Shown: positions 1 through 23,400, numbered from the stretch's first letter. The stretch: DNA of 64,000 nt from Adineta vaga (GCA_021613535.1 CP075493.1:15066001-15130000); one strand, 5' to 3'. The notes: generated from the letters alone by a model not told the origin. Made by a program: numbers and translations.

Positions 1-3000
1 TTAGTACTGATTGTCTTGATGGCAGTGACGAAGGTGAAGATCGTTACGCTCCAACTTCATTAAGAAATATGTTTTGCTCACTTACGTCCACATTTCGATG
101 TCAAGAACGTATTGGTCGATATCCTAAATCTTTTCAATGCGGTGATGGTGAATATTTACTTAATTATGTTCTACCAAATGATAGAACATTTTGTTTAAAT
201 GAGAAAGATAAAAAAGTATCTCTAGCGATACTAACGAGCATGGAACATATTTCAAATATTGATTGTCAAAAAGCATTCTATTGTGCGCTTCATGCCAATC
301 GAAAATTTGGTTACGGAGGTATAGATCATACAGGTATTGAATTATTTCTAATTTTGGAAGATATTAGAGATGAGGATTGTGAACCTTTATCTAAACATTG
401 TAAATCGGAATGGTTAGTTATACCTGCTGTTCCAGTTTTATTTGGATTCTTTCAATTTGTGTATTTTACTAATCGATCTGTGGATGATTTCAAAGCATCG
501 ATAGAACCTGATCTCGTATGTTTTCATGCACGAGCATGTCCTCGAGTGGTATTGGATATAGTTCCTATTCAAGTTACTAATGGATTAACATGTTTTTCTC
601 CTGTGAATTTCTCATTGTTTTATAAATTAAACAATTTTAATGATGCATTTGACATATTTTCACATTACAATCGATATTGTCGAACGACAGGTATTGAACA
701 ATCCTGTATCAATTCATTTGATTTCTATTGTAACGAATCGATGAAATGTATTTCATATAATCGCGTTGGTGATGTTCAATCTGATTGTTATTACGGCGAA
801 GATGAACAATTTGATGCATGTCATTTGAACGATTCAAATCGATTTAAGTGTTCATCAGAGCCAAATAAATGTTTATTACAAGTTGCAACTGGTGATAACA
901 TAATCAATTGTCGTGGAGAAGAAGACGAAATGTTTGCTTATACTCAACATTTCTCTATATTATTACCTTATGCATATATATGTGATGCGGATTCACATTT
1001 GTACAGTTATTTCTATACAATGAATGATACAGATGAATCGAATTGTCATTGGTGGCCTTGTAATAATCCCTACACACATTGTAATCAATTATGGAATTGT
1101 CCAAATGGTATTGATGAACGTAACTGTCCGGATTCAAAATGTTCTTTTAATGAACATGAATGTTATAATCAACAATCGAAATCATTTTATTGTATATCCT
1201 TAACGAATATTTATGACAAATACTTTAATTCATGTAATGAAACATCTTTTGAACGTAATGTTTACTTTTACAATGGAACAGATGATATTAGTAAAGATTA
1301 CTTTTCTTGGAATAATAGTCACTGTCTAAATTTCGATAAACTCTGTCGAATGAATTCTTATTTAGAAATATCATCTTCCGAAGAAAACATTTGCCTGTAT
1401 CCATCCGAAAATTTCTATTGAACGATTGAAAAAACCATCAAACTTATTCCAAATGATGACTATCTTTGTGAATCTAAAATAGCTTTTCGTGGAAATACTC
1501 TTCCTTTTTTCAAAACATCTCGACTAGGATATTCTCCATCGTTATCAATAAATCAGTCGAATTCAGTTCAACTTCAAACAACTCCAATGAAAAAACGCAT
1601 ATTAAACATGGATACTGAATCGATTTCCTATTGTCATCGTGGTATTCTCGTGTTACGTGGTTCAAATCAAACAAAAACATGTTTCTGTCCACCGAATTAT
1701 TTCGGATCTCAATGTCAATGGCAAAATCAACGTGTTAGTTTAACTATTCAATTCGTATGGCGTAGTATGACATATCAAATGGCAATATTTGAAGCAATTA
1801 TTATGCTTATTGATGAACATGGACAAATTGAACCATATCATGAACGAATTACTTATATGCCCGATCGTGATTGTAATATAAAATACAATCTTTATTTACT
1901 TTATCCAGATCGACCAAAATCTTTATCAAAGAATTATTCAATTCGTATTGATATTTATGAAAAAATTAATTTAATCTATTGGTTAAGTTGGTATCTACCT
2001 ATATCTTTTCGATTTTTACCGGTTAATCGAATTGCTACTCAAATACCAATTTCCGAACTACCAAATCACAATTCATGCTCTCTTACGTGCGGTGAACATG
2101 GTAAATGTATGAATTATATCAATAACAAATCATTAGTTTTTTGTTTATGCAACGATGGATATTCCGGTACTTATTGTAATGTTAAACATGCATGTCATTG
2201 CTCAGATGATTCATTCTGTTTGACTTCAACCATATGTATTTGTCCATTGCATAAGTTTGGTTCATATTGTCATTTCAAGCATTCGATGTGTCAAACAACA
2301 AGCAACAATTCATGTGAACACAGTGGAGTTTGTATTCCAAGTGATGATCGAATGAATTTAACAGATTTTACTTGTTTGTGTCCAGAATATTATTCCGGAG
2401 AACGATGCCAAAATATAAATAGTCGAATTGATGTACATTTAAATAAAGACATACGATCTAGTACATCGTTAGTATTAATACATTTCATTACAGCATTTGA
2501 TCACACTGATCATCAACGAAGAACTCAATTAAAAAAGATTTCTTACAATCAAAAGATTTTAACAATTTATGCCACTCAACCATTCCATATACTTTTTGTA
2601 CAAATACCAAATCAATATTATTATTTAACAGTACTTCGAGAAGTATTTCAACCTGCGGAACATATCAGTACGGAAATACAATTGAAAAAACGTTGTTTTT
2701 CAATCGATCAACTACTGAACGAAACTTTTCAACAATATGAATATTTACGACGAGTGAAATATTATCCATTATTATGTCGAAAGAATCTCGAATTAGAATG
2801 TTTTCATGATTAAGAACATATATGTTTATGTGATCAAGATCGATTTGCTAATTGTTTTCTATTTAATCATACAAGCAATAACAATTGTCAAGGTTATAAT
2901 TATTGTGAAAATCAAGGTCAATGTTTTCAAGATAATGCAACATGTCCAACAAAACTGACATGTATCTGTCGGGATTGTTATTATGGTGGTAAACGTCAAT

Positions 3001-3998
3001 TTTCAACGAAAGGTTTTATATTTTCCCTTGATACGATTCTTGCCTATCATATTAAACCAAAGATTTCACTGACTCAACAATCATTCATCGTTAAAATAAG
3101 TATTCTTATTAGTACGATTCTGTTGGTCGTTGGAATAATCAATGGTTTATTAGCATTTGTTACATTTCGTCGAACTAAAGTTAGACAAATGGGAAGTGGT
3201 TATTATCTTTTATCTTCATCGATCGTTTCAATATTGACAATAATTACATTAACATATAAATTTTGGTTATTAATCTTATCTCAAATATCACTTATAACTA
3301 ATGTAACTTTGCTTCATTTCAATTGTATTACAATCGATGTTCTTCTTCTAATTCTTCTTTCATCAAGTGAATGGTGTAATTGTTCTGTATCGATTGAAAG
3401 AATGTTTAGTGTTATTATGGGTACTCATTTTCGAAGAAAGAAAAGTGTCAGATTTTCTAAACGGATCATCATAATTATATTTATTTTGGTAACATCGACA
3501 CATATGCATGAACCATATCATCGTCAATTGATTGATGATTTTGATATTGATGAACATCGAATTTGGTGTTTTGTTCGATATTCATCTTCGATTCAAAAAT
3601 ACAATTCATTTATTACTCTCTTTCATTTTCTTACACCTTTTTCAATTAATATCGTTTCTTCTCTTTGGATGATTATTCAATTAGCTTATAGACGACGTGG
3701 TGTAGAACGTGGTCAAACAATACAACATCATTTAAGACATCAAATTCAACAACATCAACATCTTTTATATTCACCTTTGATATTAATATTATTAAGTTTA
3801 CCTCGTTTGATCATTTCATTTACACGTACTTGTATGAGATCAACACGGGAACCATGGTTATTTTTGATTGGTTATTTCCTTTCATTCGTACCATCAATGT
3901 CAATATTTATTGTTTTTGTATTACCATCAAAAACATACAAGACAGAATTCAATGCAGTCATCGAAAAAGTGTTAAAAAAATTTCGTACAGCGCAGTAA
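1..3998 (+). pseudogene. LDLa/EGF-repeat rhodopsin-type GPCR (5' end outside window) with two in-frame stops
   Basis: ORFs 69-1421, 1587-2813 and 3123-3998 share one frame, broken only by TGA 1419-1421 and TAA 2811-2813, and the sequence between them stays open and Cys-rich. LDLa (DCLDGSDE, NCPNGIDE), EGF repeats and a 7TM region with SIER are present. An expected EGF Cys reads Arg (YYGGKRQF). Confidence 0.75.
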
Positions 3999-4187
3999 TC
4001 TTATAAAAATCGCTTCATTCTCTATTTGCTTTGTTCATCTTGATTCACTTCGGTTTTTCAGAATATTAAAGAGGTTGATAATTACAATCGACGCCATATG
4101 TATGAGTTATTCGATATATTGGTCTATGTGATAGGTAGAAGATTTGTGAAGTATGTGAAAGGATAAAACAAGAAAAGATAACTTAGA

Positions 4188-5238
4188 TCATCCTCTAACA
4201 GGATTGCCAGTACTCGTAATCGTTGCAGGATGAATTAAACGTCTTCTTGTTCCAGTTAAAGCCCAACATTGTTTTCGAAAACTACGGTTTGATAATATTG
4301 AAACGTAGAAACTTCCAGCAGCAAATAAATAGGATGATAATCGAACAAAAACAATAATCAAATCTTCTACAGCAATTTGGAAGGATGATTTTATCCATTC
4401 ATCCGTAAACATAAAATAGAGCGAAAAAGCTCCAAATGGAACATAATTAATAATAGCAATAATTGACTGTAGAAATAACATAATTGTTAACTGTGAATCC
4501 ATCTCGTGATTAGGTGTTTGACTATGAAGAGCCGCACGTCGTTTAGCCATACTACGAATATTATACCAAAGTAGACTTGCCAGTATGATAACAAGCAAAG
4601 GAGAACCTATTGCCGAAAGAGATACATCCAGATAAGTATCAAAAGTTCGATAAATTCCTTGTTGCGACCAACAAAATCCATCTATAACCGTATAATAAAT
4701 CAATCGATGACCGCTGAGCACTAGCCAAAGAAGAGCGTTTAATACTATAATTTTGTAAGCTAGTGGAACACGGTTACTCCATTTTCGTAATTCTAGAAAA
4801 AAAGACTTAAATGAAGATAATAAAATATTAAGTACTATGCTTACTGGCTGAACGTTGTACACATAGAATTCTGTCCAATGCAGCATATAAGAACAATGTA
4901 TTTTCATTTTGATACATAAATAATGAAATAAATTCTCGAATTCTACAGAATGGTTCTGATGCACTCATCAATGGTATATGAAAGCTATTTTGTAATATGC
5001 GTGTTAACAGTATACAATCAAGAATAAATAAACTAGCAATTGTTTCCCAGAATAAATAGATAAAACAAGCTTGTCGACGATATGCTTCGGATCGAAATAC
5101 AAGTATATTTCCAACACATCCGATGTTTCCAGCCACTAATAGAAAGATTCCACCATAGGTCATTATATGAATACTAATACTTGTGATTGTACTTTCAAAA
5201 GTACTAGTTATTGTGTCCGTTGTTGTACTATTGCTCAT
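4188..5238 (-). CDS. Rhodopsin-like GPCR, 2 exons
   Basis: Start MSNSTTT at 5238. GT-AG intron 4793-4844 joins ALDRILCVQRSA to KLRKWS in frame. GN motif in TM1 and SFYV in TM7. Confidence 0.85.
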
Positions 5239-5978
5239 GTTTTGCGATATTAAAATCCTTCTGTTTTTGTGACGAATAGTGTTTAGAAAGTAGTCCAAGT
5301 GAAAGTATAAAAAGTGTGAATAGGGATTTATATATATACATCTCTTTTGATGGATTTTTAAGTGTTTAAATGCTAATGGAATAGCATTATTTTTATCACG
5401 TTTGTCAATGGTACAATTATTGATGCAATTCCGAAATGCCTTTTAGCTAATTTGACCCAGTTCAATAACTTGAATATGAATATAAGAAAATGTTATATGT
5501 AGGGACATTTTTCTCGAGTACCCGTTTTTGTAGAATACTGAGAGCAATTATATTCAGTAGATGAATTTCCCACTGCTTTTCGATCGTCAATTGTATGATA
5601 TCTAGATCAGGAGAAAGAGTATCCAACATGTCTTAAATGCCCATGTACATTCTTTATCTGTTACTGTACCACAACTATGCAAGATACAAGGACACATGAG
5701 TGAAAGTTCTGTGTATATCTTCTATTTGAATCAACTTCTCATATCATTGTTTTGAACAGATAAAAGAAAATAAAAATCGAGGTCATTTTTTGTTAAACCG
5801 GTTTTTGTACTTTCAGTTTGCATGTGAAATGACATGTGCACTAGAGATAAGGAAAAAGAAGTATAAATAATGATCTTATAACTTATTATAAACTAAATAG
5901 AAGAATAAGGTAAAAAGCAGAATACCAGAGAGATTTGTTATTACTTCATTTTTATTAACTTACAAATGGTCTTCTAGA

Positions 5979-6338
5979 TGTTCTCAAAGTCAATGTTGTT
6001 ATTTTACGAATCAATAAACGATTAGTAAAGTATTAAATAATCCGAATAAATTATCGTTTATATCTGAACGAACTGGTGCCACTTGTTCAACAACGAAATA
6101 CGAGAATATTATAGATTTTCCGAACGGTTCTTCTTTCATGGATTCAACAGGTCCAAGATCAATAATCTGGGTAATAAATAAAAATAATACCGCTATTGCT
6201 GCCGTCGATTATCAATATACGAATTGTACATCCGAAACAATAAATATAACAAACTCAAGTATTAAAAATAATGTTTACACGATATATATGATCATTATGA
6301 TTAACTTCGTTGTATTAATCAAATGGTTTTATGTATAA
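5979..6338 (+). pseudogene. Possible remnant exon of a small Cys-containing protein with hydrophobic C-terminus
   Basis: After an AG acceptor at 5976-5977 the frame reads CSQSQCCYFTNQ*TISK... and runs into ORF 6138-6338, which has a hydrophobic tail. One in-frame TAA. Confidence 0.3.
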
Positions 6339-7345
6339 AAACAAAACTAATAGTACTTGGAAATTTAAGGGTGTGAGTAATTTATTCGTGTATCATCCAC
6401 AGCCTCAAAATAAAATATATTGAATAAAAATTGCTACGAGATAAATAATGTTTGTTTTCTTCATTGTGAGAATTCCCAAGATTCATCTTATTTTTAGTTA
6501 CGATTTTTGATTGAAATAGAAGGAGGTATATTTTATTGTTATTATTTATCATAGAAAACTAAACAACTCATTTGTGAGCATCTTGCGCATTTTTAGCGAT
6601 TGTATAGGTTGTAGCATTATGATTAGTTCGACGAATTGTAAGTGGAAGGATATTTCTATACTTATATCAATCGAACTATAGTCACAGATTGCCAATGGTT
6701 TATTGATGATCGGATTGGTACCTAATGGACGCCAAACGTTGATTATTTGAAACCAATTTTGTCTTACCTTTTCACTCTCTTCTATGTCAAAACAATCATC
6801 TATCCATTCTCGAGCTGTAATTAGATCAGCGTCGACATGAGGATGAAATACCGGATTTCTATAAGTATCGATGAGGGTGGGTGTGAGTGTATATAAATTT
6901 GTAAAAAGGCGCCCGCACCCTCAAGGTGCAAATAAACGATTTTGATATTTTTTGCTGTTGTAACAATTGTTGTTTTTGCTTGTTTTCTAAATTGATCATT
7001 TTCTGATAACAAAAAGGTTCATTATTTAGATATTGTATGATTTCCAATGCCCATTCATTACAGTTCATAAATATGCACGTAATGTGTCTTCGCTTACGAA
7101 TTGTATTTATGACTAATAAAGTCTAAATGTTTATCGATTGAAAAAAATATCTATGAGCACTTTTTTGAAATCGTCATTTATATTCGAAGTCGAATTAGAC
7201 AGCTACTCGATTATATTATTTATTTATTTCAAATGTGTAAAAATATGGATATTCTTTGGAACTTTCATTAACAGTTTTGAAGGAGATTTGAAGTACCATG
7301 AATGAACATTATTTAAAAGTATTAAAAAAAATTAAATAAAATAGT

Positions 7346-8943
7346 CTACAACAATTCATACTTCATTACTTTCCCATTGGCTAAGAACGCATACATATTC
7401 ATATGTGAATCAAATGCAATATCGACTGGATCATAATTTGTTGTTATAACAACGTTACCCACCGTTGAGTTAACACAATACATCACTATTCGTGAATTAC
7501 TCATGTCTGCAACATACAAATTACCTTGCGGATCTCGTTTCATGCCTCTGGGGTTGCTGAGTGTTAAAGGACTACTAATAACATTGGTATAAGTTACATT
7601 GGGTGTTGAGTCTCCAAATATCCATAAAAACACATTGTTACCGCTTTCATCACTCATATATATTTGATTTGGTGTGCCATGTGGAAGTAAAAGTGCAGAC
7701 AATCTGGCGACGTAACTACTAGTATTAATAACAGTGATCAAACTCGATGCATTCGGAGCTAATTGTACCACTCTCGTGGCAGATTGATCCGCAATATAAA
7801 GATTAAAACTGTCATCAATAGCAATACCCGTAGGATGACTAAGAGTACCACTGACAGATGATCCCGTTCCAGCAACGATTGTTCCGCTGGGAGAGCCTGG
7901 TGCGTAGTTACGTACTCGATCGGAAGCGTGATCGTTTGTATACATGTATCCAATTTTATCAAATGTGATATAATCAATGTGATCACCATAGATTACTGTT
8001 GCTGCACTCGTGGTTGTTCCGTTACTTGGACACATGAGTACTTGTCCAATGTTATGGCCACTAAGGTAGATGATGTCAGTCGAATCTATGTAAATACTTG
8101 TAGGGTTTGATATAGAACTTGAACTAGTGCCAGCAACAGCAATACCAGTTTGATTCCAGCAGTAATTCGTACCTTAGGGAATTGATGTATTAGATAAATG
8201 TAACTAAAATTGGTAGAAATATTCACATGAAGTACATCCGGTCGTGGTAGTCGTTGTACTAGCAGTACTTGTTGTCGTTGTTGTTGTTGATGTCGATGTT
8301 GTTGCAGTACTTGTTGTTGTTACTGATGTTGTTGTGCTGGTACTGCTTGTTGTCGATACTGATGTGGATGTCGCTGCACTAGTTACTGATGTCGTTGTCG
8401 TTTGTGTTGATGTTGATGTTGTAGTGGTAGTGGTGACGGTTGTACCTGTTGATGTTATTGTAGTTGTTACTGATGTTATTAGATAAAAATATTCATTCAA
8501 TATTATACAACTCTCTTTCTCTCATAATAGTTCACTTACCTGCTGGTTGTGCGTTTGTATTTATGCCATTTTGGGAATTATGTGCTAAAATTTGAGAAAA
8601 AAAAACTAGAAGCACTTGTATACTACACCAACATCCTTACTTGACAGCGGTTTTAGCCACAGTGTTAAGATAACAGCTAAACCGATACTTGCAACTAGCG
8701 CACCAATTAATAAACCAACTAAACATGCTTTACACTCGAAACAACATAGGATATAACCTGCTGCACGCCTAGATTGATTATTGATCAATATAACGGAACA
8801 TAATATAAATTAGTGTATGATATACTTTGTATCACTGTATTGATCATCGTCATCATCCTCATTGCAAACGTTGATTGATTGTTGTTTCAATGTCTAAAAT
8901 AATTTCATATCGACTAAGTATCATTCATAACGTTACTCACCAT
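7346..8943 (-). CDS. Membrane-anchored NHL-repeat (beta-propeller) protein with Thr/Ser-rich stalk, multi-exon
   Basis: ATG at 8943 followed directly by a GTGAGT donor. TM exon ~8640-8760, Thr-rich exon ~8235-8480, last exon with NHL repeats (LSHPTGIAID..NLYIAD, LSNPRGM..NLYVAD). Confidence 0.8.
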
Positions 8944-9071
8944 TTTGATTGTATTAAGTCTTTTCAGATTCTAAACAATTGAAAAGTATCGGTTTTATTC
9001 TGAAAGATTTTTTTTCATAATAAAAATATTCGCTCCTAGACAACCCTTGAAAATAACAAGAAAAAATCGTG

Positions 9072-9074
<3 letters not shown>

Positions 9075-9101
<27 letters not shown>
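9075..9101. repeat. (TA)n microsatellite
   Basis: Uninterrupted TA run. Confidence 0.9.
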
Positions 9102-9105
<4 letters not shown>

Positions 9106-9732
9106 TTATTTATTTCTATGTCATCTTTTTGGAGTAACTCAATCCGATAATTGAAATTCTGTTTTCTTCCTTAATAATGACATATGTTTCGATTGGGTTT
9201 CCAAGTAGCATAATGTTTATACAATTTCATCGCTCGATGCAAATTCTGTTTGACAAATATTGAAACAAAATATTGTTTGAAATTGAAAGTTTTCTTCGAG
9301 AAAAATGAATAGTCTGAGAAAAGATGAATGCGAAATGAACATGAAAGTTGATAAAGCATCAATTAATCCTATATTTTCAATATAACCTCTAATGAATAAA
9401 TCATGTGTGATGTTGTTTACGAAAATGAAGCTGAGGGTGTGAGTGGCCACTCAATTTCATCCTCATACCTATACCCACCCACATGCACACCCTCAACCTA
9501 TGTTAGCAAAGATATTCTATTTCTCGAGTATAAGTAATTTATACGATCTACACGATCATCCAACTTTAGAAGATCGCACATTAGTTGCACTTACTAATAA
9601 CTACACTCTCAAGTTTATTTTAAAATGTGTTTAACAAAACTACAAAGCAAGGTTCATATACAAAGTGATCTATGATAGTATAAGAGATTTCTAATATAAA
9701 CTACTGTAGAAGCAATGAAATGTTTCATTAGT

Positions 9733-12700
9733 TTAAACCGATGCTGAACATTCGATAAATCTTGGATTAAATGATTGAAATGGATATTTTCTTGTCTTAT
9801 TACGTTGATCAATATCTTTCGATAAATTTCTTAAATCATTTTTAAATTCTTGATAATTCTTCAAATTTTTTTGATAATTTTGATCATGTTCAATTAAATG
9901 ACTCCAATCTTCTAATAATCCAGGCATTCGTAAACCAGTAACAACAGTTAAAATAAGTATTTGTGTATATGTTTGAATATTTTGCATTTCTTTTCCTTCT
10001 TGTAATTTTGCTCCAATAAATCGTGGATCAATCATATAACCACTAATTTGACCAACATGTTCATGTATACCAGTACTATCAGCAATCAATTGTGATAAAA
10101 CATCAACAAAACGTTTCAATGAAGTAATACCAGGTATTCCAAGTTGTTTGCATAGATCATCAATAAAATTCATCATATACGAATCGACTGGTAATTTATC
10201 ATCGGATAAATTCGTTTCGACTTGTTCATCATCGATATCGATGTGTAAATTATAAGTTATTTCGAAGAAATTTGCAACATATTGTTGTATAATTCTCCAA
10301 AACTCTTTAATATCCAAATAAATTGGATAGACTTTATCCCATTCTTTCTTTTCCGCATCACCTTTCGGAAACATTGATGGAGAAATAAATTCTGGTAATA
10401 ATCGAAATTTATAATTTGTTGATATATAATCACAAACTTTCAAAAATTCATCATAATCAAATGCCCATATTCGATGAACTAGACCACGTCGATTGACTAA
10501 TGACATTGCTGCTTGATAATTAACTGAAATATTATGATATGTAAATGGTTTAAGAAATGATCTTAATGGATGATCTACTGGTAAACATTTTCGTGTTGCA
10601 GTAACAAATGCATTACATTCGATCATATGTGTAACAATGAGATGATCACATATGGTTACATATGCAAAGAATGATGAACGCCAAACATATTTTGCATGTT
10701 CCCAAAATTGATCATCTTTTTCAACTAAACGATTAGCATGACACCAATAAATAGCAATCAATTGAAAATCTTTATCGAAATATGCAGCTGCTCCATAACG
10801 TTCAAATGGTTTTCGTACATTAAAAATCGATAAAACTGTCATATCATTAACATAGAGTGCAGCATTGTCTAAAGATCTTTGTTCCGGTATTCCAAATCCT
10901 GGTTTCCATTTACCTTCAATACGTTGAGTATAATGACATGCACAGCCAAAAAATGCTAATCGACTCATGGCTTCATCGGAGAACATATCGGTATAAACAA
11001 TATTTGGTAAAGGTAATGCAGGAAAGATCTTTGAACTCCATGCAAGTGCTTGTTCTAATGTTTCAAATTCAGCTAAACAATCATAAAAATCCCAAAGAGT
11101 ACTGTTAACTAACCAACGAGCAAATTTTCTTGATAAACCTGAACCATCTGGTTCATCTTCATCCCATGATGGAATAAATTTTGCCATATCAATTCGAATT
11201 ATTCCAAGTTTTTCGATCGGTAAATTCAATGGTGGTCTTATATCAATAGCACGTGATGGAGATGTATTGGATTCTTTAACAGCTGTTTTCATTAATAACC
11301 AAACAAGTTTTGTATATGTATCTAATGTTTTCCAACATCGACGCTTTTCTGTATCATTTAATTTTCGAATTTTTCTCTTGAATAAAACCATTTCTTTTTC
11401 ATTGGAATCATTTTTCTCTTCTTCTTCTTGATCAGATGATGAACTTTGTTTTTGTTCATCGAAATCATCGATAATTGGTAAAAATCGTTCAGCAACATAT
11501 TGAATAACATCAAGAGCTAAATCATGTCCTGGACAATAACGTATTGGTCGTTTAGTTCGATCTGGATTGATAATATCTTCTTCAACACCATTCCAAACAA
11601 TAAGTTTGTTTAAATCTGATCGATCGGGTAAGAATTCTTCAGGATTTTGAAAAATAGTTTCATCACGATTTGCATTAACAAGTGAACAATGAATCGGTGT
11701 ATTTTCCGGTATGTGAATATGTTCATTTTGAATTTCATTGATAATTTCATTTGTTGCTAAGACATTCACTGTCGGAACAACTTTATCAAGTCGTGCACAT
11801 TCTTTAATGAAATTATGTGGATTCTTCTTAAATAAAGGAACATTTTTTTCCTTATCTGTCCATAATCGATCAATAACTGTCACTGCTAATTTTGCCGGTG
11901 CTGGACTTCCAGCTACACAAAAGACGACGGTAATAAATTTGAAAATTTCTTCACGAGATTTTTTCATTTCAGCTGCAGCTACAGCAGCTTTAAAAGCTGG
12001 TCCATTTTCATATCGTGAAAATGCTTGAAGAAGAGTATAATAACTACGTAAATTCTTCCGTTCAAAATAATGACCATTTAATAAGAAATTAAACCAATTT
12101 GGAAAGAATATCAATGGATTTTTAACACAATCAATAAAAGCTGAACGTTCTTGTTTTGTTAATTCTCCATTTGTTGCTAAGAAAAACATAACTTCACCAA
12201 CTGCTTGATAAACTAAATCATCCGTTGGTTTTTCATTCATTTGACGTGGAAGAATTCGTGCTAATTGTAATCGTGTTTCGAAATTTCCATTTTGTAAATT
12301 ATGAGGAAATGCATGTAACCATTGAAAGATTATCTTTCGACCTAATTGCATATCAGGATCGTCTGTAGAAAGAAAAATGGTTGTAAAATTACAAAATGTT
12401 TTCAATGATTGTGAAACTTCCCATGCTAATAATTCACAATCTTTACGTGGTCGAAGTTCTTGAACAAATCGTTTAACTAATTGATATGAATTCACAGCTA
12501 AACCATTACCCAAAACAAAATAAGGAGAATTATAAACATGACGAAAATAATCTTCTAATGATTTGAATAAATAAACAGGTTGTGCAGAATTCGAAATATA
12601 TTCAATAAATGTAGCGAATTGTAAGAGAAGAGATTTCAAATGCCAAAGATGATTTCGTTTGTCAATCGATGTATTGAGTAATGTTAATCTCATATTTGCT

Positions 12701-13434
12701 GTAACATTACGAACAAATTCCGGAACTTTTTTACTCGGTGATGGTGATGATGATGGTGGTGTTCGAGATTTATAGATAATTCGACAATAAATTATTAGAA
12801 TAAAATAAGCAGGTAAAACGATAGTAAATAATGTTAATAATCCAATAATTCCAAGTAGAAAATAAGAGATTGTACGTAATGGTTGAGGTAATTTATCAGC
12901 AAATCGAACAATGTGAGAATTATTGAATAAATGCGTTTTAACGTGAAAATTTTCAATAAAACCTTGACCTCGTTTGATAACAATTCGTTCATTGGTTCGA
13001 TATGTTTTTAAAAACGTATATTTTATCAAATGATAGAGTAAGAAACCAAATGGTGCTGCTAGATAAGTTATAAAAAGAAGAATTGTAAGAAGAATTCTTC
13101 CAGATGTCCATGATTTATTTGTACCAGTATAGGCAAATGTATATCCTGTATAAAAATCATATACCATCCATCGAGCAACCCATAAATCCATTACAGAAAG
13201 ATGATTTCTACTATCATTGAATGATATTTTCCAAATAGATAAATTCCATTGAGAAATATTCAAATCTCGAAAGAATAATATAAATGTATATTCTATCGAT
13301 AATAATAAAGCAGGTAGAAGAATTAAATATCTGGAAAGTTTATGAAATGGTGCTAAGATTAATGCAAACCATCCGATAAGAATAATATGATTTAATTTAA
13401 ATAGATTTTCCGATGTAAAAATATCCAATGCCAT
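9733..13434 (-). CDS. Fusion protein: ABA4/DUF4281-like membrane domain + CYP74-like cytochrome P450 + lipoxygenase
   Basis: Single 1233-aa ORF. N-terminus has HLSVMDLWVARWMVYD..APFGFLLY. P450 part has ExxR (KECAR), ANRD..F.NPEEFLPDR and heme Cys in VWNG..RYCPGHDL. LOX part has W..AK, HLIVTH, HPL..FLKP, TGIHEHVG and C-terminal ECSASV. Confidence 0.85.
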   Translation of the reverse strand: MALDIFTSENLFKLNHIILIGWFALILAPFHKLSRYLILLPALLLSIEYTFILFFRDLNISQWNLSIWKISFNDSRNHLSVMDLWVARWMVYDFYTGYTFAYTGTNKSWTSGRILLTILLFITYLAAPFGFLLYHLIKYTFLKTYRTNERIVIKRGQGFIENFHVKTHLFNNSHIVRFADKLPQPLRTISYFLLGIIGLLTLFTIVLPAYFILIIYCRIIYKSRTPPSSSPSPSKKVPEFVRNVTANMRLTLLNTSIDKRNHLWHLKSLLLQFATFIEYISNSAQPVYLFKSLEDYFRHVYNSPYFVLGNGLAVNSYQLVKRFVQELRPRKDCELLAWEVSQSLKTFCNFTTIFLSTDDPDMQLGRKIIFQWLHAFPHNLQNGNFETRLQLARILPRQMNEKPTDDLVYQAVGEVMFFLATNGELTKQERSAFIDCVKNPLIFFPNWFNFLLNGHYFERKNLRSYYTLLQAFSRYENGPAFKAAVAAAEMKKSREEIFKFITVVFCVAGSPAPAKLAVTVIDRLWTDKEKNVPLFKKNPHNFIKECARLDKVVPTVNVLATNEIINEIQNEHIHIPENTPIHCSLVNANRDETIFQNPEEFLPDRSDLNKLIVWNGVEEDIINPDRTKRPIRYCPGHDLALDVIQYVAERFLPIIDDFDEQKQSSSSDQEEEEKNDSNEKEMVLFKRKIRKLNDTEKRRCWKTLDTYTKLVWLLMKTAVKESNTSPSRAIDIRPPLNLPIEKLGIIRIDMAKFIPSWDEDEPDGSGLSRKFARWLVNSTLWDFYDCLAEFETLEQALAWSSKIFPALPLPNIVYTDMFSDEAMSRLAFFGCACHYTQRIEGKWKPGFGIPEQRSLDNAALYVNDMTVLSIFNVRKPFERYGAAAYFDKDFQLIAIYWCHANRLVEKDDQFWEHAKYVWRSSFFAYVTICDHLIVTHMIECNAFVTATRKCLPVDHPLRSFLKPFTYHNISVNYQAAMSLVNRRGLVHRIWAFDYDEFLKVCDYISTNYKFRLLPEFISPSMFPKGDAEKKEWDKVYPIYLDIKEFWRIIQQYVANFFEITYNLHIDIDDEQVETNLSDDKLPVDSYMMNFIDDLCKQLGIPGITSLKRFVDVLSQLIADSTGIHEHVGQISGYMIDPRFIGAKLQEGKEMQNIQTYTQILILTVVTGLRMPGLLEDWSHLIEHDQNYQKNLKNYQEFKNDLRNLSKDIDQRNKTRKYPFQSFNPRFIECSASV

Positions 13435-13484
13435 TATGATTAATTATATCTAGAAAAAGAAAAGATTAGTTTTATTCAAACTTT

Positions 13485-15221
13485 TCAATATCGATTTCCT
13501 TGAACAATATAATTCTCATAAAAATACACAAATGCTTTATAATCTTCTTCAGTCTTTAATACTTCCCATTCTTTATCAAAGATTCCAACAAATTTTCCAT
13601 CATCTAACGCCATAGATTTTGTCATTTTATAATTTAATTTCATTCGACGTATATTACTAAATTTCGCCAAATTACTTCCAATTATTTCAATAAAACTACG
13701 TGGTGCATCCATCAATGTATTCACCAAATAACCTTTATTCATTATCCATCCAAGATAACCACCCCAAGTCGATGGTGATAATGTTGTATTATAACAACCA
13801 GTACCAATAGAAAGTAAATGATAATTTGCCGGTTTCTTCCATTGCATTCGAATTGCCCATAGGGCAGATAATTCCGGATCATTAGCAAATACACCACCAT
13901 CAATAAACAATTCCGATGGGCCATCCTTTTCAAATTGATCATTTACTTTTTTTCCTGTAGAAATTTCCATTGGTGGAAAATAAGTTGGAGCAGCCATTGT
14001 TGCTTTTAAAACATCAGCAATACGATAACCCCAATGTTGAGAATAACTCGTATTAAATATCATAATACTATTCGTTGTTGTATTATATGAAGTAATAAGT
14101 AGAACTTTTTCACGATTAATTCTATGAAAACTATAATTTTCAGTAATTCGATGGACATTATCATCGATATTCTTAATATCATCAACAAATTCTAATAAAT
14201 TTCCATGATTTGAAGCAGCACGTAATTGAGCTTCTTCATTTGTAATAATCTTTTCTGGATTTAAGATATTACGTATATCAAGTAATGTCGCATTTTCCGC
14301 TGATAATTTTGTTCCATCTTTAAATGTAAGACTATTAATAATATCATCAATCTTTTGATGTATACGTGCTGGATTATATTTAGAATAAATGATTGGTCCT
14401 AAATAATTTCGCCAGAAATAATGAGAATATTTTGCATAAATATCCATCATTTCTAATATACTATAATTCATTGCTAAACAAAAAGCAATTAGACCACCTG
14501 TACTTGTTCCAACAAAATAATCGAATTGTTCAGTAAATTTAATTTGAGCTTTTTCAAATAATTTCTTATGTTCAATATTACGTGAATCAAGTGGTTCATT
14601 TAAAGACAAATATTTTTGTGTAACTAATTGAGAAATGATTTTTATTGGCATATAACCACGTACACCTATATACGAATAAGAAAACAAAATCAAAGAATTG
14701 TAATTATTTAAATTCATCTTACCTCCACCATCTAAACTTAATACACGTATATTTCGTTCATGTGCTTCTAAATGATATCTTGCAAGTAAGGAATCTAATC
14801 CATGCCATTCGATATCTTTTGTTGATGAAAGATTTTTCATTTTTTCTAATTGATCCATAACAATTGACATATCATAATCATTACAAATTTTCTTTTCTTT
14901 TTCTATACGTTTTAAATGTTCTTCTCGAATTTTATTTCGAACTGTTTGTCCATTGATTTCAGCTTGTTCAACTAATATCCATTCAATGCAATCATTTGTA
15001 ATTAATCCATGTTCAGAAAGTTCAATATGTCTTTGTAAATGATCGTTACGAACACTATCTAATAGTTGATTGTATTGTAATTGACCACATGTATGACATA
15101 AATCAAATATTTTGCAAATTTTACATTGTCTCCAAGCAACATCATCAATAGTAATACCACAGTGATCACAACGAAAATGTGTAGAAATTTCACTGGCTGA
15201 TTTCATAAGACGCGACGCCAT
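13485..15221 (-). CDS. Patatin-like phospholipase with N-terminal ZZ-type zinc finger
   Basis: CDHC..CKIC..FDLCHTC zinc finger. Removing the 57-nt GT-AG intron 14666-14722 restores LSLDGGGVRG. GTSTG nucleophile, AAPTYF and DGG catalytic Asp present. Likely start MASRL at 15221. Confidence 0.9.
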   Translation of the reverse strand: MASRLMKSASEISTHFRCDHCGITIDDVAWRQCKICKIFDLCHTCGQLQYNQLLDSVRNDHLQRHIELSEHGLITNDCIEWILVEQAEINGQTVRNKIREEHLKRIEKEKKICNDYDMSIVMDQLEKMKNLSSTKDIEWHGLDSLLARYHLEAHERNIRVLSLDGGGKMNLNNYNSLILFSYSYIGVRGYMPIKIISQLVTQKYLSLNEPLDSRNIEHKKLFEKAQIKFTEQFDYFVGTSTGGLIAFCLAMNYSILEMMDIYAKYSHYFWRNYLGPIIYSKYNPARIHQKIDDIINSLTFKDGTKLSAENATLLDIRNILNPEKIITNEEAQLRAASNHGNLLEFVDDIKNIDDNVHRITENYSFHRINREKVLLITSYNTTTNSIMIFNTSYSQHWGYRIADVLKATMAAPTYFPPMEISTGKKVNDQFEKDGPSELFIDGGVFANDPELSALWAIRMQWKKPANYHLLSIGTGCYNTTLSPSTWGGYLGWIMNKGYLVNTLMDAPRSFIEIIGSNLAKFSNIRRMKLNYKMTKSMALDDGKFVGIFDKEWEVLKTEEDYKAFVYFYENYIVQGNRY

Positions 15222-15797
15222 GATTTCTATAACTAGAATGAAATAAAACAACAAGTCGAATAAATAGATGTGTTTTTTTTTCTTCTTCTCTCTCTATATC
15301 ATAGGGTAACAATATAAGGGAAATAGTCTATCGATGTTTTTCTCCCGATAGAAAAGAAAAAGAACGTTATTTTCTCCCACATGATTCATATCGATGACCT
15401 AGATCGAAAGAACGATAAAATAGATCAATATTAAGGGCATATTTATCCGACCAATACAACGAAAGCAGACGAATATATACATATCAGTAAACAAGGAGAA
15501 AACGAGAATGTTTTTCTGTTTCATATTCACACGTACTCTCACGATGACCTACTTTTTTTATTTCGTTTTTCCAAATTTGAACTTTTTGGAATTGTAGAAT
15601 TCTCCAAGAAATATCAACACAATGTTCTTGATTTAAAATAATTCTATAAAGTCTCGCATCAATGAAATTAGATTATCATATAAATAATTTAAAAGCATAC
15701 ATTATGATTTTTCTACAAGAAATTAATTACACAAAAATATACTCATTATATTTTTATTTTTTACATAAATTCATCTTTTTTTCTGCAAAGGAAAATA

Positions 15798-20410: not shown

Positions 20411-23400
20411 TTATGGTTCATAGTTTATAAATGAAAATTGCTCAAGAAATAAATCTTTGTCGGTCATAAATTTCACAGCAATCTCTTCAAGCCACTTGAC
20501 AAAGTCTTCATCATGTGCATGTACAATATTATGTGCCAGTTCATGACATGTGACCATAAAATAAAAATTGACGATTGTGTGTATAATAGGAGTTGATGGG
20601 GAAGATATTCTAAGATAAGGTTTTAGTTCATCGGCATATACCTGTTCGAAATAACGAAGATTAAAGAAAAGTGATCCTCCATAATTGAATGCTATTTTTG
20701 CTAAACAACAAAATGCCGAAGAAAATTAAAGGAAAGGATTATCTACTCTTACTTCCATTGATATCTCGAAAAAGATGTATTGTTTCATAAGCCATGTTGA
20801 AAACACGAGTAGCAAGACCTTTAAGAAGATAAGCAAGTTGATATCCTTGATCGATCATTGCGTTTGTTATGATCACATTTTCTTCAACATATAACGGGAT
20901 TGAATGAAAAACCATATCAAAACGTGTCATATTCTCCGAGGGAATTTGTTCACATATAGTATTAATCTCTGTTTTTGTATATGGTAATCGAATGAGTTTC
21001 GAATGATTATAGGCTTGACTTTTGCGAATCTTTTTCATATAATTTTGGCTTTCTTTCTTGTTACGTCCAAAATCTGGCATCGGAGTAGGTTTATGAAATG
21101 AATGGGTGTGCGTAGTATAGTCACCTCCAACACCTATGATCGGAGAAATTTGATGGTTTTGATCAGTAGCTTTACGACCATTATGAGCAGCTGTAGTCGG
21201 ACCAGCTTTAGGTTGATGGTTATTCACATCAGGAGAAATGCTACTATTTTTTCCTTTTCGACCAAATGGCAACCAGCTGAAAACAAATAGAATTAAATTA
21301 AATTAAGTTAAGTTAATCTATTAAGAATAAACAGTGAGTCCAAAGGTTGCATGAATCAATGTCAGATGAAGATTTATATATCTATTCTTCTGTCTTAGAG
21401 ATCATATATGAAAAGATGAATTCAATGTAAACAGAAATGATGATAGTTATTTAAAAAACTCTTGAAACCCCCCAAAGATTGTACATGACTGCTCAAAAGT
21501 CTCCGAGAAATATCTAAATACTGACCTGCGTAAGTTTTGAAGAAACGTGGATTTCTGACGTGGTTGTTGCTTTTGTTGTTGTTGTTGTTGTGGTGGTGGT
21601 GGTGGTAGTTGGCGTCCCATTCCGTGTACGGAAAACAATTCTAAAAACTTATTGCTTGCTATTAATTAAATTCTGTATGCTAGTTTAACTGACCTTCTGT
21701 GTGTGTACTTTGGAGCAAACGATCAACAGGAATACCTCTTCGTCTGAGTATTTCTATGGATAATCCAAGTTTATCACTGATGTCATGTACGTAATTAACT
21801 TCTCTTATAAAACAAAATGCATGTATCTCAGCTGCAATATCGTAATAATCTATGTTAGTTATATCTTTTCGAAGATATAACATCACGTTCTTCGTATCAT
21901 ATACAAGCATACACCAACTCGCATTTTCCGACTATAATTTCGAGTGAAATCAGAATATTGAAAACAAAAATACTAGTATATTGGTTCTTACGTCAAGTTG
22001 AATAGTTTGGTTTTTAAAAGTCAATACACTTTTGATATGATCGACTTCATAGATTGAAAGTGTTGTACGTAATAGTTTGATATGTTCTTCGATACAACCT
22101 TCGAGACGTTCTTCCTAAAAGAGAATACTTTTTGAAATTGAACTAGTCGTGAATTGTGCAAAAATAATTACCCGATTATTGACAAATAACATTGGAAATC
22201 GATATTGAATCAAAGCTCGTAATTCATTGGTTTTCACGGAAGTGACTGGTTTACCTTAAATACACAACAAAAGAAATCAATTGTATTTCTCGTTTATTCT
22301 TGAATATTTTTCAAAACAGATTCTTTATTCATAATACTATGTAAGTGAAGGATGTAATATGAGCTGTAAAACTATTGATCAGATCAAACTGTACCTATGC
22401 ATGTTCTTGTTTTTGTGACACAATCAGATAACCATTTTGCTCCGAAGTGTTGATATAGTGTAGGTAATTGTGATATTTTTGGTGGTAATAATGGTCGAAA
22501 TTTTTCTGCACACATCGGACTATCATCAAGATATATTTCATCTGGTTTAACAATTTCAAATATTTGCTCTCTTGTTCCATTTTCATGATCAATATTACGA
22601 AAACCAAGGCACCAAGCACTAGTTTTCAGTCGCGTGTATAACGGTTCCTGTTGAAGCTCATTTGAACAAGTATAAGCAACTATAAGTTCTTTGAGACAAT
22701 TAATATATACACGCATCTTCTTATTCAACATGTCTTTGTTGCCTTCTGCACTTGCAAAATATCTAGCCTGTCGGTCAATCATAAGTTCGGCAAGAGCTGA
22801 AGATTTAGGATGATTGACAACACCAATAGTAAGAAGAAATGCATTGGCATCAACACCAAAATCAACATAATCAATAAGACCACTTGTATCTATATCAGTG
22901 ATTTCGTCCGTATCAGTTTTACTAGATGTATCAGCATTTGAACGAATAAAAACTTGTGATGGTTTCGTCAATATCGTATTGTTCGAAAGATCTAAATGAA
23001 TTTAATACAAGTCTGTTATCTTTCCAAATATATAAACTAACCTTGTATTGGAATGAAATTACTATTCGATACTTTTTTGATAAATGTTTGATCTATTCCT
23101 TGGAGTCTATTTAGATAAGCAAATATCTTCGGTGCTGATTGTTTTGTTAAAAAATTTGTTGATTTTCCCAATAAAGTATCAAATGCTTTTGAAAGACTTG
23201 GATGCTCTCCGATGTCAAGAGACGAATTAATGAAATTTTTCTGGAATAAAATAAGCACTTCTGGTAAAAGACTAGGACATAATGGATTTACACTTTTGTA
23301 TACTTCATCTGGTGCTAAGAGTACTACATCATTATCGTTGTTATTTTCGGGTAAATATGATGGTAAAAAACGATACTGTCTGATTGTATCCAATTTCCAT

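What the first reader, a model, noticed from the sequence alone, without database searches (positions are those of the whole stretch)
9733..13434. Single-chain ABA4-like / CYP74-like P450 / lipoxygenase fusion
Seen: one uninterrupted ORF with a TM domain (aa ~1-140) resembling the ABA4/DUF4281 HxxxxDLxVxRW..P.G.L.Y pattern, a P450 (ExxR ~aa545, heme Cys aa634), an acidic linker and a LOX domain. The P450 I-helix (FCVAGSPAP) lacks the oxygen-activating Thr and the heme loop carries an insertion. Established: both traits mark hydroperoxide-rearranging CYP74-type enzymes (AOS/HPL/EAS). The LOX fusions I know use a catalase-type AOS (corals, cyanobacteria), and fungal fusions pair P450 with a heme dioxygenase. 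Plant ABA4 is needed for neoxanthin formation, an epoxide-to-allene conversion. Inference: LOX makes a fatty-acid hydroperoxide, the P450 rearranges it without a reductase, and the ABA4-like domain anchors the protein or acts on the epoxide/allene oxide. I do not know this architecture from the literature.
Basis: partly seen in the sequence, partly recalled or inferred. Interest (0 to 1): 0.92.

Follow-up and report, generated by a model that had tools for sequence, protein, structure and literature searches.

The report
Membrane-anchored P450–lipoxygenase fusion in a rotifer
A bdelloid rotifer (Adineta vaga) expresses a single 1233-residue protein that joins a small membrane domain, an unusual cytochrome P450 and a lipoxygenase; this undescribed architecture also occurs in many protists and probably makes lipid signalling or defence molecules in one chain.

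Summary
Window 9733-13434 (-) is one uninterrupted 1233-aa ORF. RNA-type contigs from three studies cover it end to end with no joint, and one carries the bdelloid spliced leader 17 nt before the ATG.

- **Domains.** All three are real: ABA4-like/DUF4281 (16 of 19 family members hit PF14108), a heme-thiolate P450 (ExxR, invariant Cys634, P450 fold Z 19.8) and a lipoxygenase without a PLAT domain (Pfam above cut-off, LOX fold, 3 His plus C-terminal Val).
- **P450.** It lacks the I-helix acid-alcohol pair. It is not demonstrably CYP74: there is no specific profile or fold affinity, no catalytic Asn, and the "heme-loop insertion" is only about 4 residues.
- **Distribution.** The architecture is not unique to this gene. 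A. vaga has three copies and all sampled bdelloids have it. Related P450-LOX or ABA4-P450-LOX proteins occur in Amoebozoa, Heterolobosea, Foraminifera and dinoflagellates. No other animal has it, which suggests an old horizontal acquisition.
- **Neighbour.** A patatin-like phospholipase gene lies 50 nt upstream on the same strand, and this order is conserved in A. ricciae. The pair looks like an operon.
- **Best reading (0.6).** The phospholipase releases a PUFA, the LOX makes a hydroperoxide, and the P450 rearranges it without a reductase.

I found no paper describing this. Other readers of this scan had already noted the same idea on this stretch and on the two paralogs elsewhere in the genome.

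The parts
9733..13434 (-). Complete coding sequence of the 1233-aa fusion protein (stop codon 9733-9735)
   Evidence: ORF list and translation. Single RNA-type contigs span 9608-13426, 9732-13448 and 9587-13451 with no joints.
12985..13434 (-). ABA4-like / DUF4281 membrane domain (aa 1-150, four predicted helices)
   Evidence: PF14108 at 23.2 bits on this protein. It is hit in 16 of 19 family members, best E 2.2e-10. Helices 8-27, 32-58, 66-96 and 111-147 in the model, pLDDT 50-67. dN/dS 0.42 against the C5 copy.
12763..12885 (-). Long hydrophobic helix (aa 184-224) before the P450 domain; probable fifth membrane span or P450 anchor
   Evidence: Model helix 184-224 at pLDDT 83-87. It is conserved in the Acrasis homolog, whose alignment starts at aa 181.
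11470..12717 (-). Cytochrome P450 domain (aa 240-655)
   Evidence: Pfam p450 at 27.2 bits. Foldseek to P450eryF/BioI/CYP106, E about 1e-7, TM 0.6. VIA-align Z 19.8, 338 residues aligned. dN/dS 0.24.
11890..11922 (-). I-helix segment F505-K515 (AGSPAP): the acid-alcohol pair is replaced by Pro/Ala
   Evidence: Family alignment. HMMER alignment to the CypX I-helix.
11791..11802 (-). K-helix ExxR (E545, R548)
   Evidence: Invariant in 18-28 sequences.
11524..11550 (-). Heme-thiolate loop R629-H637 (PIRYCPGH) with Cys634
   Evidence: R632, C634 and G636 are invariant across rotifer and protist members.
11383..11472 (-). Acidic, low-complexity interdomain linker (aa 655-684)
   Evidence: Composition. 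pLDDT below 50. dN/dS 1.2. Relatives carry a short intron here.
9736..11337 (-). Lipoxygenase catalytic domain without PLAT (aa 700-1233)
   Evidence: Pfam at 33.6 bits. PDB profile search gives FgLOX 6ns2 at 8.5e-17. Foldseek to 5-LOX, PA-LOX and CspLOX2, TMq 0.60-0.64 over 500-530 columns. dN/dS 0.31.
10627..10644 (-). LOX metal ligands H931 and H936 (DHLxxxH)
   Evidence: Invariant in all 42 LOX-domain sequences compared.
10051..10065 (-). Third His ligand H1124 in HEHVG; the usual Asn/His fifth-ligand position is Gly1128
   Evidence: HMMER alignment to FgLOX. The motif is conserved across the clade, including the bacterial LOX-only members.
13435..13461 (-). 5' UTR (13435-13449) and trans-splice acceptor (polypyrimidine tract plus AG at 13451-13450)
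   Evidence: Sequence. The contig of run X10 continues beyond 13451 with the reverse complement of CTTACCAAG, the 3' end of a 17-mer present 44 times in the genome against 0 for the control.
9587..9732 (-). 3' UTR (contigs end at 9587-9628)
   Evidence: Contig ends in runs X1, X10 and X6, with no coverage at 8700-9587.
13485..15221 (-). Upstream patatin-like phospholipase gene with N-terminal ZZ-type Cys/His motif; probable substrate-releasing partner and first cistron
   Evidence: PF01734 at 1.5e-14. GTSTG and DGG catalytic motifs. AATAAA at 13476-13471, about 20 nt before the acceptor. Same gene order and 50-nt spacing in A. ricciae.

Best explanation
The ORF encodes a membrane-anchored, self-contained oxylipin synthase of the bdelloid rotifer Adineta vaga.

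Shown:
- It is one expressed, unspliced, SL-trans-spliced mRNA.
- It has three real domains in the order ABA4-like membrane domain, heme-thiolate P450, PLAT-less lipoxygenase.
- The catalytic motifs of the P450 and LOX domains are conserved under purifying selection.
- A catalytically intact patatin-like phospholipase gene lies 50 nt upstream in a conserved, operon-like arrangement.

Inferred:
- The phospholipase frees a polyunsaturated fatty acid from membrane lipid.
- The C-terminal LOX adds O2 to give a fatty-acid hydroperoxide. The product is probably S-configured, because the Coffa position is Ala975.
- The N-terminal P450 lacks the proton-relay acid-alcohol pair and has no reductase domain. 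It would use that hydroperoxide directly and rearrange it to an allene oxide, epoxy alcohol, divinyl ether or aldehyde-type product, as CYP74, CYP5A/8A and the fungal DOX-CYP fusions do.
- The ABA4-like domain plus one further helix hold the enzyme in the membrane next to its lipid substrate.
- The family is old in protists and reached bdelloids by horizontal transfer before they radiated.
For: - **ORF and expression:**
- **Domains:** Pfam. P450 fold: Foldseek E about 1e-7 and VIA Z 19.8. LOX fold at TMq 0.60-0.64. PDB profile hit to LOX at 8.5e-17.
- **Catalytic residues:** ExxR and Cys634 are invariant. The I-helix AGSPAP has neither Thr nor acid. LOX residues H931, H936, H1124, C-terminal Val and Coffa Ala975 are conserved in 42 sequences.
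- **Selection:** dN/dS is 0.24 for the P450 and 0.31 for the LOX against the C5 paralog, while the linker is about 1.2.
- **Non-classical P450 matches:** among solved P450s, the K-helix-to-L-helix profile places AOS CYP74A (5e-7) and the CYP152 peroxygenases among the few full-span matches.
- **Phospholipase neighbour:** it has an intact Ser/Asp dyad, and the order is conserved in A. ricciae. An unrelated PLA2 (PLA2G12) lies next to a GC-rich non-rotifer homolog.
- **Analogy in domain order:** coral and cyanobacterial AOS-LOX fusions also have the heme domain at the N-terminus and the LOX at the C-terminus (abstracts listed: PMC3925239, PMC5617202).
- **Distribution and tree:**
Against: - No biochemical data exist.
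- The P450 shows no specific kinship to CYP74. One search lists none. In one search AOS is rank 12 at Z 18.5, tied with many others. The heme loop searched alone finds none.
- It has no I-helix Asn, the catalytic residue of CYP74 and fungal hydroperoxide-converting CYPs.
- Lack of the conserved Thr does not exclude monooxygenation; P450eryF is the top Foldseek hit and is a monooxygenase.
- The LOX fifth ligand is Gly. The model is low-confidence around H1124 and the C-terminus, so the geometry of the metal site is unverified.
- The patatin gene is absent next to the two paralogs.
- The Acrasis homolog has a shortened heme loop, so the P450 part may not be catalytic everywhere.
Confidence: 0.6

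Rival explanations
1. The P450 domain is a conventional, reductase-dependent monooxygenase (fatty-acid epoxygenase or hydroxylase). It would act before or after the LOX, using the cell's separate NADPH-P450 reductase.
For: The best fold matches are ordinary monooxygenases such as EryF, BioI (a fatty-acyl P450), CYP153 and CYP106. EryF also lacks the Thr. The membrane anchor helix resembles that of microsomal P450s.
Against: Both the acid and the alcohol of the proton relay are replaced by Pro/Ala in all close relatives. Covalent fusion to a hydroperoxide-making enzyme is the hallmark of hydroperoxide-using heme partners. The canonical FxxGxRxCxG is reduced to PRxCPG.
Confidence: 0.15
2. The P450 acts as a peroxygenase. 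It would use the LOX-made hydroperoxide as an oxygen donor to epoxidise or hydroxylate a second lipid (co-oxidation), rather than rearranging the hydroperoxide itself.
For: CYP152 fatty-acid peroxygenases are among the full-span profile matches (E about 1e-5 to 1e-4) and appear in the fold list (CYP152N1 at Z 17.6). Like CYP152, the I-helix has Pro at the acid-alcohol site.
Against: There is no CYP152-type I-helix Arg next to the Pro. The scores are no better than for generic P450s.
Confidence: 0.1
3. One domain is a non-catalytic remnant. Either the P450 serves as a scaffold, or the LOX serves as a hydroperoxide isomerase or lipid binder. The protein then has a single enzymatic activity.
For: The Acrasis homolog lacks 11 residues of the heme loop and the AGxPAP segment. 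The LOX has Gly at the fifth ligand position. The LOX model is weak at the third His and the C-terminus.
Against: In bdelloids and most protist members, Cys, the preceding Arg, ExxR, three His and the C-terminal Ile/Val are all invariant. dN/dS is 0.24-0.31 for both domains.
Confidence: 0.1
4. Artefact: contamination or a mis-joined gene model rather than a rotifer gene.
For: The closest non-rotifer relatives are protists.
Against: The gene lies inside an 18-Mb chromosome-scale contig. Its GC of 0.29-0.32 matches its flanks. It is flanked by animal-type genes: GPCR, EGF/NHL. There are two paralogs on other chromosomes and orthologs in five bdelloid genera. The mRNA carries the rotifer spliced leader.
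Confidence: 0.01

Closest known systems
Catalase-related allene oxide synthase-lipoxygenase fusions of corals (Plexaura, Capnella) and cyanobacteria
   Same: One chain carries an N-terminal hydroperoxide-converting hemoprotein and a C-terminal lipoxygenase. The LOX product is handed to the heme domain, and no reductase is needed (PMC3925239, PMC5617202; PDB 3dy5 appears among the LOX profile hits).
   Different: There the heme domain is a small catalase-fold protein with a Tyr ligand. Here it is a Cys-ligated P450 fold. The coral LOX has a PLAT domain and an Asn/His fifth ligand. There is no ABA4-like membrane domain.
Fungal dioxygenase-cytochrome P450 fusions (9S-DOX-AOS, 7,8-/5,8-linoleate diol synthases, EAS)
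   Same: A fatty-acid oxygenase is fused to a self-sufficient P450 that isomerises the hydroperoxide without O2 or a reductase (PMC13049297 abstract; references in PMC10813956).
   Different: The oxygenase there is a heme peroxidase/cyclooxygenase-like DOX, not a non-heme-iron LOX. The domain order is reversed (DOX N-terminal, CYP C-terminal). The fungal CYPs use an I-helix amide residue, which is absent here.
CYP74 family and clan (plant AOS/HPL/DES/EAS; CYP440, CYP443, CYP5164)
   Same: These are P450s without a proton-relay Thr that act on LOX-derived hydroperoxides, independent of a redox partner (PMC10813956). Arabidopsis AOS is among the better PDB matches for the C-terminal half, and guayule AOS gives the longest structural alignment (371 residues, Z 18.5).
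   Different: They are stand-alone proteins, never fused to a LOX. No specific profile match exists for the whole domain or the heme loop. The I-helix Asn is absent. The heme-loop excess is about 4 residues rather than 9.
PLAT-less 'mini' lipoxygenases (Cyanothece CspLOX2; myxobacterial/deltaproteobacterial LOXs)
   Same: The catalytic domain is the same size and there is no PLAT domain. CspLOX2 gives the best TM scores (0.64/0.61). Deltaproteobacterial LOX-only proteins share the HExVG motif and the C-terminal SVS(I/V).
   Different: Those are soluble single-domain enzymes. CspLOX2 keeps the Asn-type fifth ligand (from general knowledge, not tested here).
Plant ABA4 / DUF4281 (PF14108)
   Same: A small four-helix membrane protein family. 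The N-domains of the fusion family match the Pfam model nearly end to end (positions 7-127 of 127).
   Different: ABA4 is a stand-alone plastid protein linked genetically to neoxanthin formation. No enzymatic mechanism is established for it. Here the domain is fused to oxylipin enzymes in organisms without plastids.

Membership tests
Lipoxygenase (PF00305) | Profile match above the curated threshold | tested here: met
   33.6 bits against a cut-off of 23.6. The family profile against the PDB gives 8.5e-17 to FgLOX.
Lipoxygenase (PF00305) | LOX catalytic-domain fold | tested here: met
   Foldseek E 6e-11, TMq 0.60-0.64, 500-530 aligned columns to 5-LOX, PA-LOX and CspLOX2. Model pLDDT is only 62.6.
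Lipoxygenase (PF00305) | Metal ligands: HxxxxH, a third His, and the C-terminal Ile/Val carboxylate | tested here: met
   H931/H936 are invariant. H1124 aligns to the FgLOX His. The C-terminus is ...SASV.
Lipoxygenase (PF00305) | Fifth ligand Asn/His/Ser four residues after the third His | tested here: not met
   The position is Gly1128 in the whole clade, including bacterial members. The effect on catalysis is unknown.
Cytochrome P450 (PF00067) | Profile match and P450 fold | tested here: met
   27.2 bits against a cut-off of 22.8, covering the K-helix and meander only. Foldseek TMt about 0.6 over 390 columns. VIA Z 19.8.
Cytochrome P450 (PF00067) | ExxR and the heme-ligating Cys | tested here: met
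   E545, R548, R632, C634 and G636 are invariant.
Cytochrome P450 (PF00067) | I-helix (A/G)Gx(D/E)T oxygen-activation motif (classical monooxygenases) | tested here: not met
   The motif is AGSPAP. The acid and Thr positions are Pro/Ala or Ser/Pro, depending on register.
CYP74 clan | Specific sequence or phylogenetic affinity to CYP74 | tested here: inconclusive
   The whole-domain profile gives no CYP74 among 94 PDB hits. The C-terminal-half profile puts 2rch at rank 7, 5e-7. The heme loop alone gives none. By fold, 3dam has Z 18.5 against a best of 19.8. I could not obtain a CYP74 profile for comparison.
CYP74 clan | Catalytic Asn in the I-helix groove | tested here: not met
   There is no Asn or Gln in F505-K515 in any close relative. 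The register rests on sequence alignment only.
CYP74 clan | Insertion of about 9 residues in the heme-binding loop | tested here: not met
   The family consensus aligns to the CYP76AH loop with 2 extra residues, and A. vaga has about 4.
CYP74 clan | Turnover of hydroperoxides without O2 or a redox partner | not testable with these tools
   Needs an enzyme assay.
ABA4-like / DUF4281 (PF14108) | Profile match above the curated threshold | tested here: inconclusive
   This protein scores 21.6-23.2 bits against a cut-off of 27. 16 of 19 homologous N-domains match at E<=0.01, best 2.2e-10, over the full model length.
Catalase-related AOS-LOX fusion | Catalase-fold heme domain N-terminal to the LOX | tested here: not met
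   The N-terminal heme domain has the P450 fold.
Fungal DOX-CYP fusion | Heme-peroxidase-type dioxygenase domain | tested here: not met
   No such domain was found. The oxygenase is a LOX.

The most novel reading that the evidence does not exclude
ABA4-P450-LOX proteins form an ancient, undescribed class of membrane-bound, single-chain oxylipin synthases found across eukaryotic supergroups (Amoebozoa, Discoba, Rhizaria, Alveolata). Bdelloid rotifers captured this enzyme by horizontal transfer. They then wired it, through an SL-trans-spliced operon with a phospholipase, into a two-gene pathway that runs from membrane lipid to a rearranged oxylipin. The ABA4-like domain would be an active participant, handling the epoxide or allene-oxide intermediate in the bilayer. 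That would give the first biochemical handle on what ABA4/DUF4281 proteins do.
Probability: 0.25. Interest if true: 0.85.

Novelty: new variant of a known kind. Interest (0 to 1): 0.7.

Why it matters
Natural fusions of a fatty-acid oxygenase with a hydroperoxide-converting hemoprotein are known in only two forms: catalase-type AOS-LOX and DOX-CYP. They have been key to understanding substrate channelling in oxylipin synthesis.

A third form, P450-LOX with a membrane domain, would matter in four ways:
- It would assign enzymes to so far orphan oxylipin pathways in dinoflagellates, foraminifera, amoebae and perhaps diatoms.
- It would add a functional, expressed, foreign metabolic gene to the bdelloid horizontal-transfer catalogue, one that sits in a candidate operon with its substrate-supplying phospholipase.
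- It would offer a self-sufficient biocatalyst.
- It would make the unknown function of DUF4281/ABA4 experimentally approachable outside plants.

Tried and rejected
- **CYP74 membership.** The whole-domain profile against the PDB, Foldseek, VIA-align against 48,161 chains and the heme-loop profile gave no specific link. Only the K-helix-to-L-helix profile ranks AOS high. I had no tool-derived CYP74 sequences for a profile-profile test.
- **A separate two-domain class.** The roughly 700-aa 'ABA4+P450 only' proteins are gene-calling artefacts, at least for P0033. A 47-nt GT..AG phase-1 intron joins it in frame to the adjacent LOX ORF. The A. ricciae ortholog also has about 54 nt of intron.
- **Phospholipase next to the paralogs.** tblastn of the patatin protein found nothing in the C5 and C6 loci.
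- **Language-model atlas.** The P450 part returns generic bacterial P450 clusters, and the N-domain gives no usable hit.
- **Word-based homolog search with the N-domain profile.** It found only five fragments.
- **Literature.** Eight text searches found no paper on a P450-LOX fusion, bdelloid LOX or DUF4281 with LOX. One search concerned the spliced leader.
- **Contamination or mis-assembly.** Rejected (see rival explanations).


Full report
**What is there**

The window lies on contig C1 of a 100.8-Mb, six-contig genome with about 31% GC. Database hits name it as the bdelloid rotifer Adineta vaga. Positions 9733-13434 on the minus strand hold one uninterrupted ATG-to-stop ORF of 1233 codons.

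I laid Logan contigs of four public runs on 8700-14600.
- Single contigs cover 9608-13426 (X1), 9732-13448 (X9) and 9587-13321 plus 13295-13451 (X10).
- There is no joint or indel inside the ORF.
- There is no coverage of the downstream intergenic stretch 8700-9587, and there is a break at about 13450-13500.

This pattern is that of transcripts, not genomic DNA.

The X10 contig runs on beyond 13451 with nine letters whose reverse complement is CTTACCAAG. On the coding strand, the genome there reads a polypyrimidine tract, then AG (13451-13450), then 15 nt, then the ATG. From memory, the bdelloid spliced leader ends ...TTACAACTTACCAAGAG. That 17-mer occurs 44 times in this genome, often in divergent pairs and clusters, against 0 for the reversed control. 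This is what SL RNA genes look like. So the mRNA is trans-spliced 15-17 nt before the start codon and carries the whole ORF unspliced.

**The three domains**

On the single protein, Pfam gives Lipoxygenase at 33.6 bits (cut-off 23.6, aa 906-1068), p450 at 27.2 bits (cut-off 22.8, aa 541-605) and ABA4-like at 21.6 bits (below the cut-off of 27, aa 15-134).

- **N-domain.** 16 of 19 homologous N-domains hit PF14108, the best at 2.2e-10. The match spans model positions 7-127 of 127.
- **P450 domain.** An AlphaFold model of aa 1-700 (pLDDT 71.8; P450 part 75-92) matches P450 structures. Foldseek gives E about 1e-7 and TM about 0.6 over roughly 390 columns. VIA-align gives Z 19.8.
- **LOX domain.** A model of aa 691-1233 has pLDDT 62.6. 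The core helices reach 80-90, but the region around the third His and the C-terminus is below 50. It matches LOX catalytic domains over 500-530 columns at TMq 0.60-0.64. There is no room for a PLAT barrel and no Pfam signal for one.
- **Membrane helices.** The model shows four helices in the ABA4-like part and a long hydrophobic helix at 184-224 before the P450.
- **Linker.** aa 655-684 is acidic and disordered.

**Catalytic residues**

In alignments of 18-33 family members:
- E545-x-x-R548 is invariant or nearly so.
- The heme loop ...P-R632-x-C634-P-G636 is invariant or nearly so.
- The I-helix reads A508-G-S-P-A-P513 (AGxPAP/AGxAAP in relatives).

Whichever register is used, the acid and Thr of the classical (A/G)Gx(D/E)T motif are replaced by Pro/Ala or Ser/Pro.

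In the LOX domain:
- D-H931-x4-H936, H1124 (aligned by HMMER to the His ligand of Fusarium LOX 6ns2) and the C-terminal S-x-S-V/I are conserved in all 42 sequences compared.
- The Coffa position is Ala975, which predicts S-oxygenation. That rule is taken from general knowledge.
- The usual Asn/His fifth ligand is Gly1128 in the entire clade.

dN/dS against the C5 paralog is 0.24 (P450), 0.31 (LOX), 0.42 (ABA4-like) and 1.2 (linker).

**Is the P450 CYP74-like?**

Only in a functional sense.
- A whole-domain family profile finds 94 PDB P450 sequences at E<=1 (best 9e-5), and none is CYP74.
- Foldseek's top 50 are bacterial and microsomal monooxygenases.
- In the exhaustive VIA-align search, guayule AOS (3dam) is rank 12 at Z 18.5. 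It has the longest alignment (371 residues) but is within about 1 Z of many unrelated P450s.
- A profile of the K-helix-to-L-helix part built from 28 diverse members does place Arabidopsis AOS at rank 7 (5e-7, full span). It sits beside a 'P450 oxidase'/BcmD pair, CypX and the CYP152 peroxygenases.
- With the heme loop alone, CYP74 disappears. The family consensus aligns to microsomal CYP76AH with only two extra residues. The A. vaga loop has 28 residues between R605 and C634, about four more than CYP76AH.

The review PMC10813956 confirms that CYP74-clan enzymes need neither O2 nor redox partners and differ from monooxygenases in the I-helix groove. That property is what this domain shares with them. 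Kinship is not shown.

**Distribution**

- **In A. vaga:** three full copies exist. These are C1 (this one), C5 (75% identical) and C6 (42%). A fragment with stops lies on C3.
- **In other bdelloids:** full-length orthologs of two deep clades (A and B) occur in A. ricciae, A. steineri, Rotaria and Didymodactylos.
- **The 'two-domain' class:** an apparent roughly 700-aa class is a gene-calling artefact. In L007, a 47-nt GT..AG phase-1 intron in the linker joins it in frame to a 573-aa LOX ORF.
- **Family size:** an exhaustive HMMER search of 1.84 billion representatives with the ABA4+P450 profile returned only 323 hits at E<=0.001, so this is a small, distinct P450 lineage.
- **Architecture of the hits:** I classified them with local HMMs. 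Dozens are P450+LOX or ABA4+P450+LOX.
- **Named members:**
  - Soliformovum irregulare (Amoebozoa): a 1431-aa transcript with all three domains.
  - Bolivina argentea (Foraminifera): P450+LOX.
  - Acrasis kona (Heterolobosea): 32% identity over aa 181-1233, but with a shortened heme loop.
  - Effrenium voratum (dinoflagellate): P450+LOX.
  - LOX-only relatives in a diatom, a haptophyte and deltaproteobacteria.
- **Other animals:** the only non-bdelloid animal hit is a conventional fish LOX.
- **Tree:** on a quick maximum-likelihood tree of the LOX domain rooted on the bacterial proteins, bdelloid clades A and B group with Soliformovum and an unnamed 64%-GC eukaryote (SH-aLRT 99). Acrasis, the foraminifer and the diatom lie outside.

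With host-like GC, a spliced leader, and introns in some copies, this fits an ancient horizontal acquisition from a protist before the bdelloid radiation. Direction and number of transfers were not tested with an AU test.

**Genomic context**

- The ORF directly upstream on the same strand (13485-15221/15254) is a patatin-like phospholipase (PF01734, 1.5e-14). It has an intact GTSTG serine and DGG aspartate, and an N-terminal Cys/His zinc-finger-like motif.
- Its stop codon is 50 nt from the fusion's ATG. An AATAAA sits about 20 nt before the trans-splice acceptor. A transcript contig of the patatin gene ends at 13449.
- A. ricciae has the same patatin-fusion-NHL gene order with the same 50-nt spacing.
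- The C5 and C6 paralogs lack a patatin neighbour.
- A 55%-GC non-rotifer homolog has an unrelated PLA2 (PLA2G12) next door.

This is suggestive of a phospholipase-oxygenase functional pair and of an SL-resolved operon. Contigs cannot prove co-transcription.

**Mechanism and verdict**

The best reading (0.6) is a three-step route.
1. A lipase releases a polyunsaturated fatty acid.
2. The LOX forms a hydroperoxide.
3. The reductase-independent P450 rearranges it.

All of this would take place at a membrane, held there by the ABA4-like domain.

The rivals are:
- a classical reductase-dependent monooxygenase (0.15);
- a peroxygenase-type co-oxidation (0.1);
- one dead domain (0.1);
- an artefact (0.01).

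Eight text searches found no description of such a fusion. Earlier first-reader notes of this scan on the same stretch and on the two paralogs proposed the same ideas. I reached the patatin and operon points independently and tested them here.

I class the finding as a new variant of a known kind, namely oxygenase-hemoprotein fusion enzymes of oxylipin synthesis. It is of clear interest to oxylipin, P450 and bdelloid-HGT specialists, but all function remains inferred from sequence.

Noticed in passing
window 13435-13484 and 13485-15254 (-): A patatin-like phospholipase gene ends 50 nt before the fusion gene's ATG. AATAAA lies at 13476-13471, the trans-splice acceptor AG at 13451-13450, and a spliced-leader tail sits on the downstream mRNA. 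This is a candidate two-gene SL operon. The same order and spacing occur in A. ricciae (L011 4220-5950 and 6001-9831).
   Followed up: partly
G000:C5:9884356-9925969, C5:10912931-10934587, C2:8684673-8691979 and others: The 17-mer TTACAACTTACCAAGAG occurs 44 times (control 0). It often appears as divergent pairs about 160 bp apart within clusters, which probably mark spliced-leader RNA gene arrays.
   Followed up: no
L005 (G000:C3:1222685-1222801): A short LOX-like fragment (56% identity to aa 1023-1061) carries four stop codons. It is probably the decayed remnant of a fourth copy.
   Followed up: no
L006 773-1459 (-) beside 2056-6810 (+): In a 55%-GC, 1x long-read metagenome contig, a non-rotifer ABA4-P450-LOX homolog is broken into three frames, probably by read errors. 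It lies next to a group XII secretory PLA2 gene, a second and unrelated phospholipase neighbour.
   Followed up: no
L011 6001-9831 and L007 8078-8124: Orthologs in A. ricciae and an environmental bdelloid carry a 47-54-nt intron in the P450-LOX linker. The A. vaga C1, C5 and C6 copies are intronless ORFs. The intron was therefore either gained after acquisition or lost in A. vaga.
   Followed up: partly
P0141, P0152, P0165, P0179, P0193, P0199, P0204, P0209, P0222: A second, unnamed subfamily of 1250-1400-aa P450-LOX proteins has a roughly 300-aa spacer between the domains. Its I-helix is different (FAGxxGTTH). The organisms are unknown (metagenome and Logan contigs).
   Followed up: no
window 23037-26438 (-): Adjacent ORFs with DUF3684 and sacsin/HATPase_c_3 matches look like exons of one large sacsin-like gene.
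   Followed up: no
window 1587-2813 (+), 3123-4964, 7346-8035 (-): Animal-type neighbours are present: a teneurin-like EGF repeat protein, two rhodopsin/Srw-type GPCR ORFs and an NHL-repeat protein. The fusion gene therefore sits in ordinary metazoan gene context.
   Followed up: no
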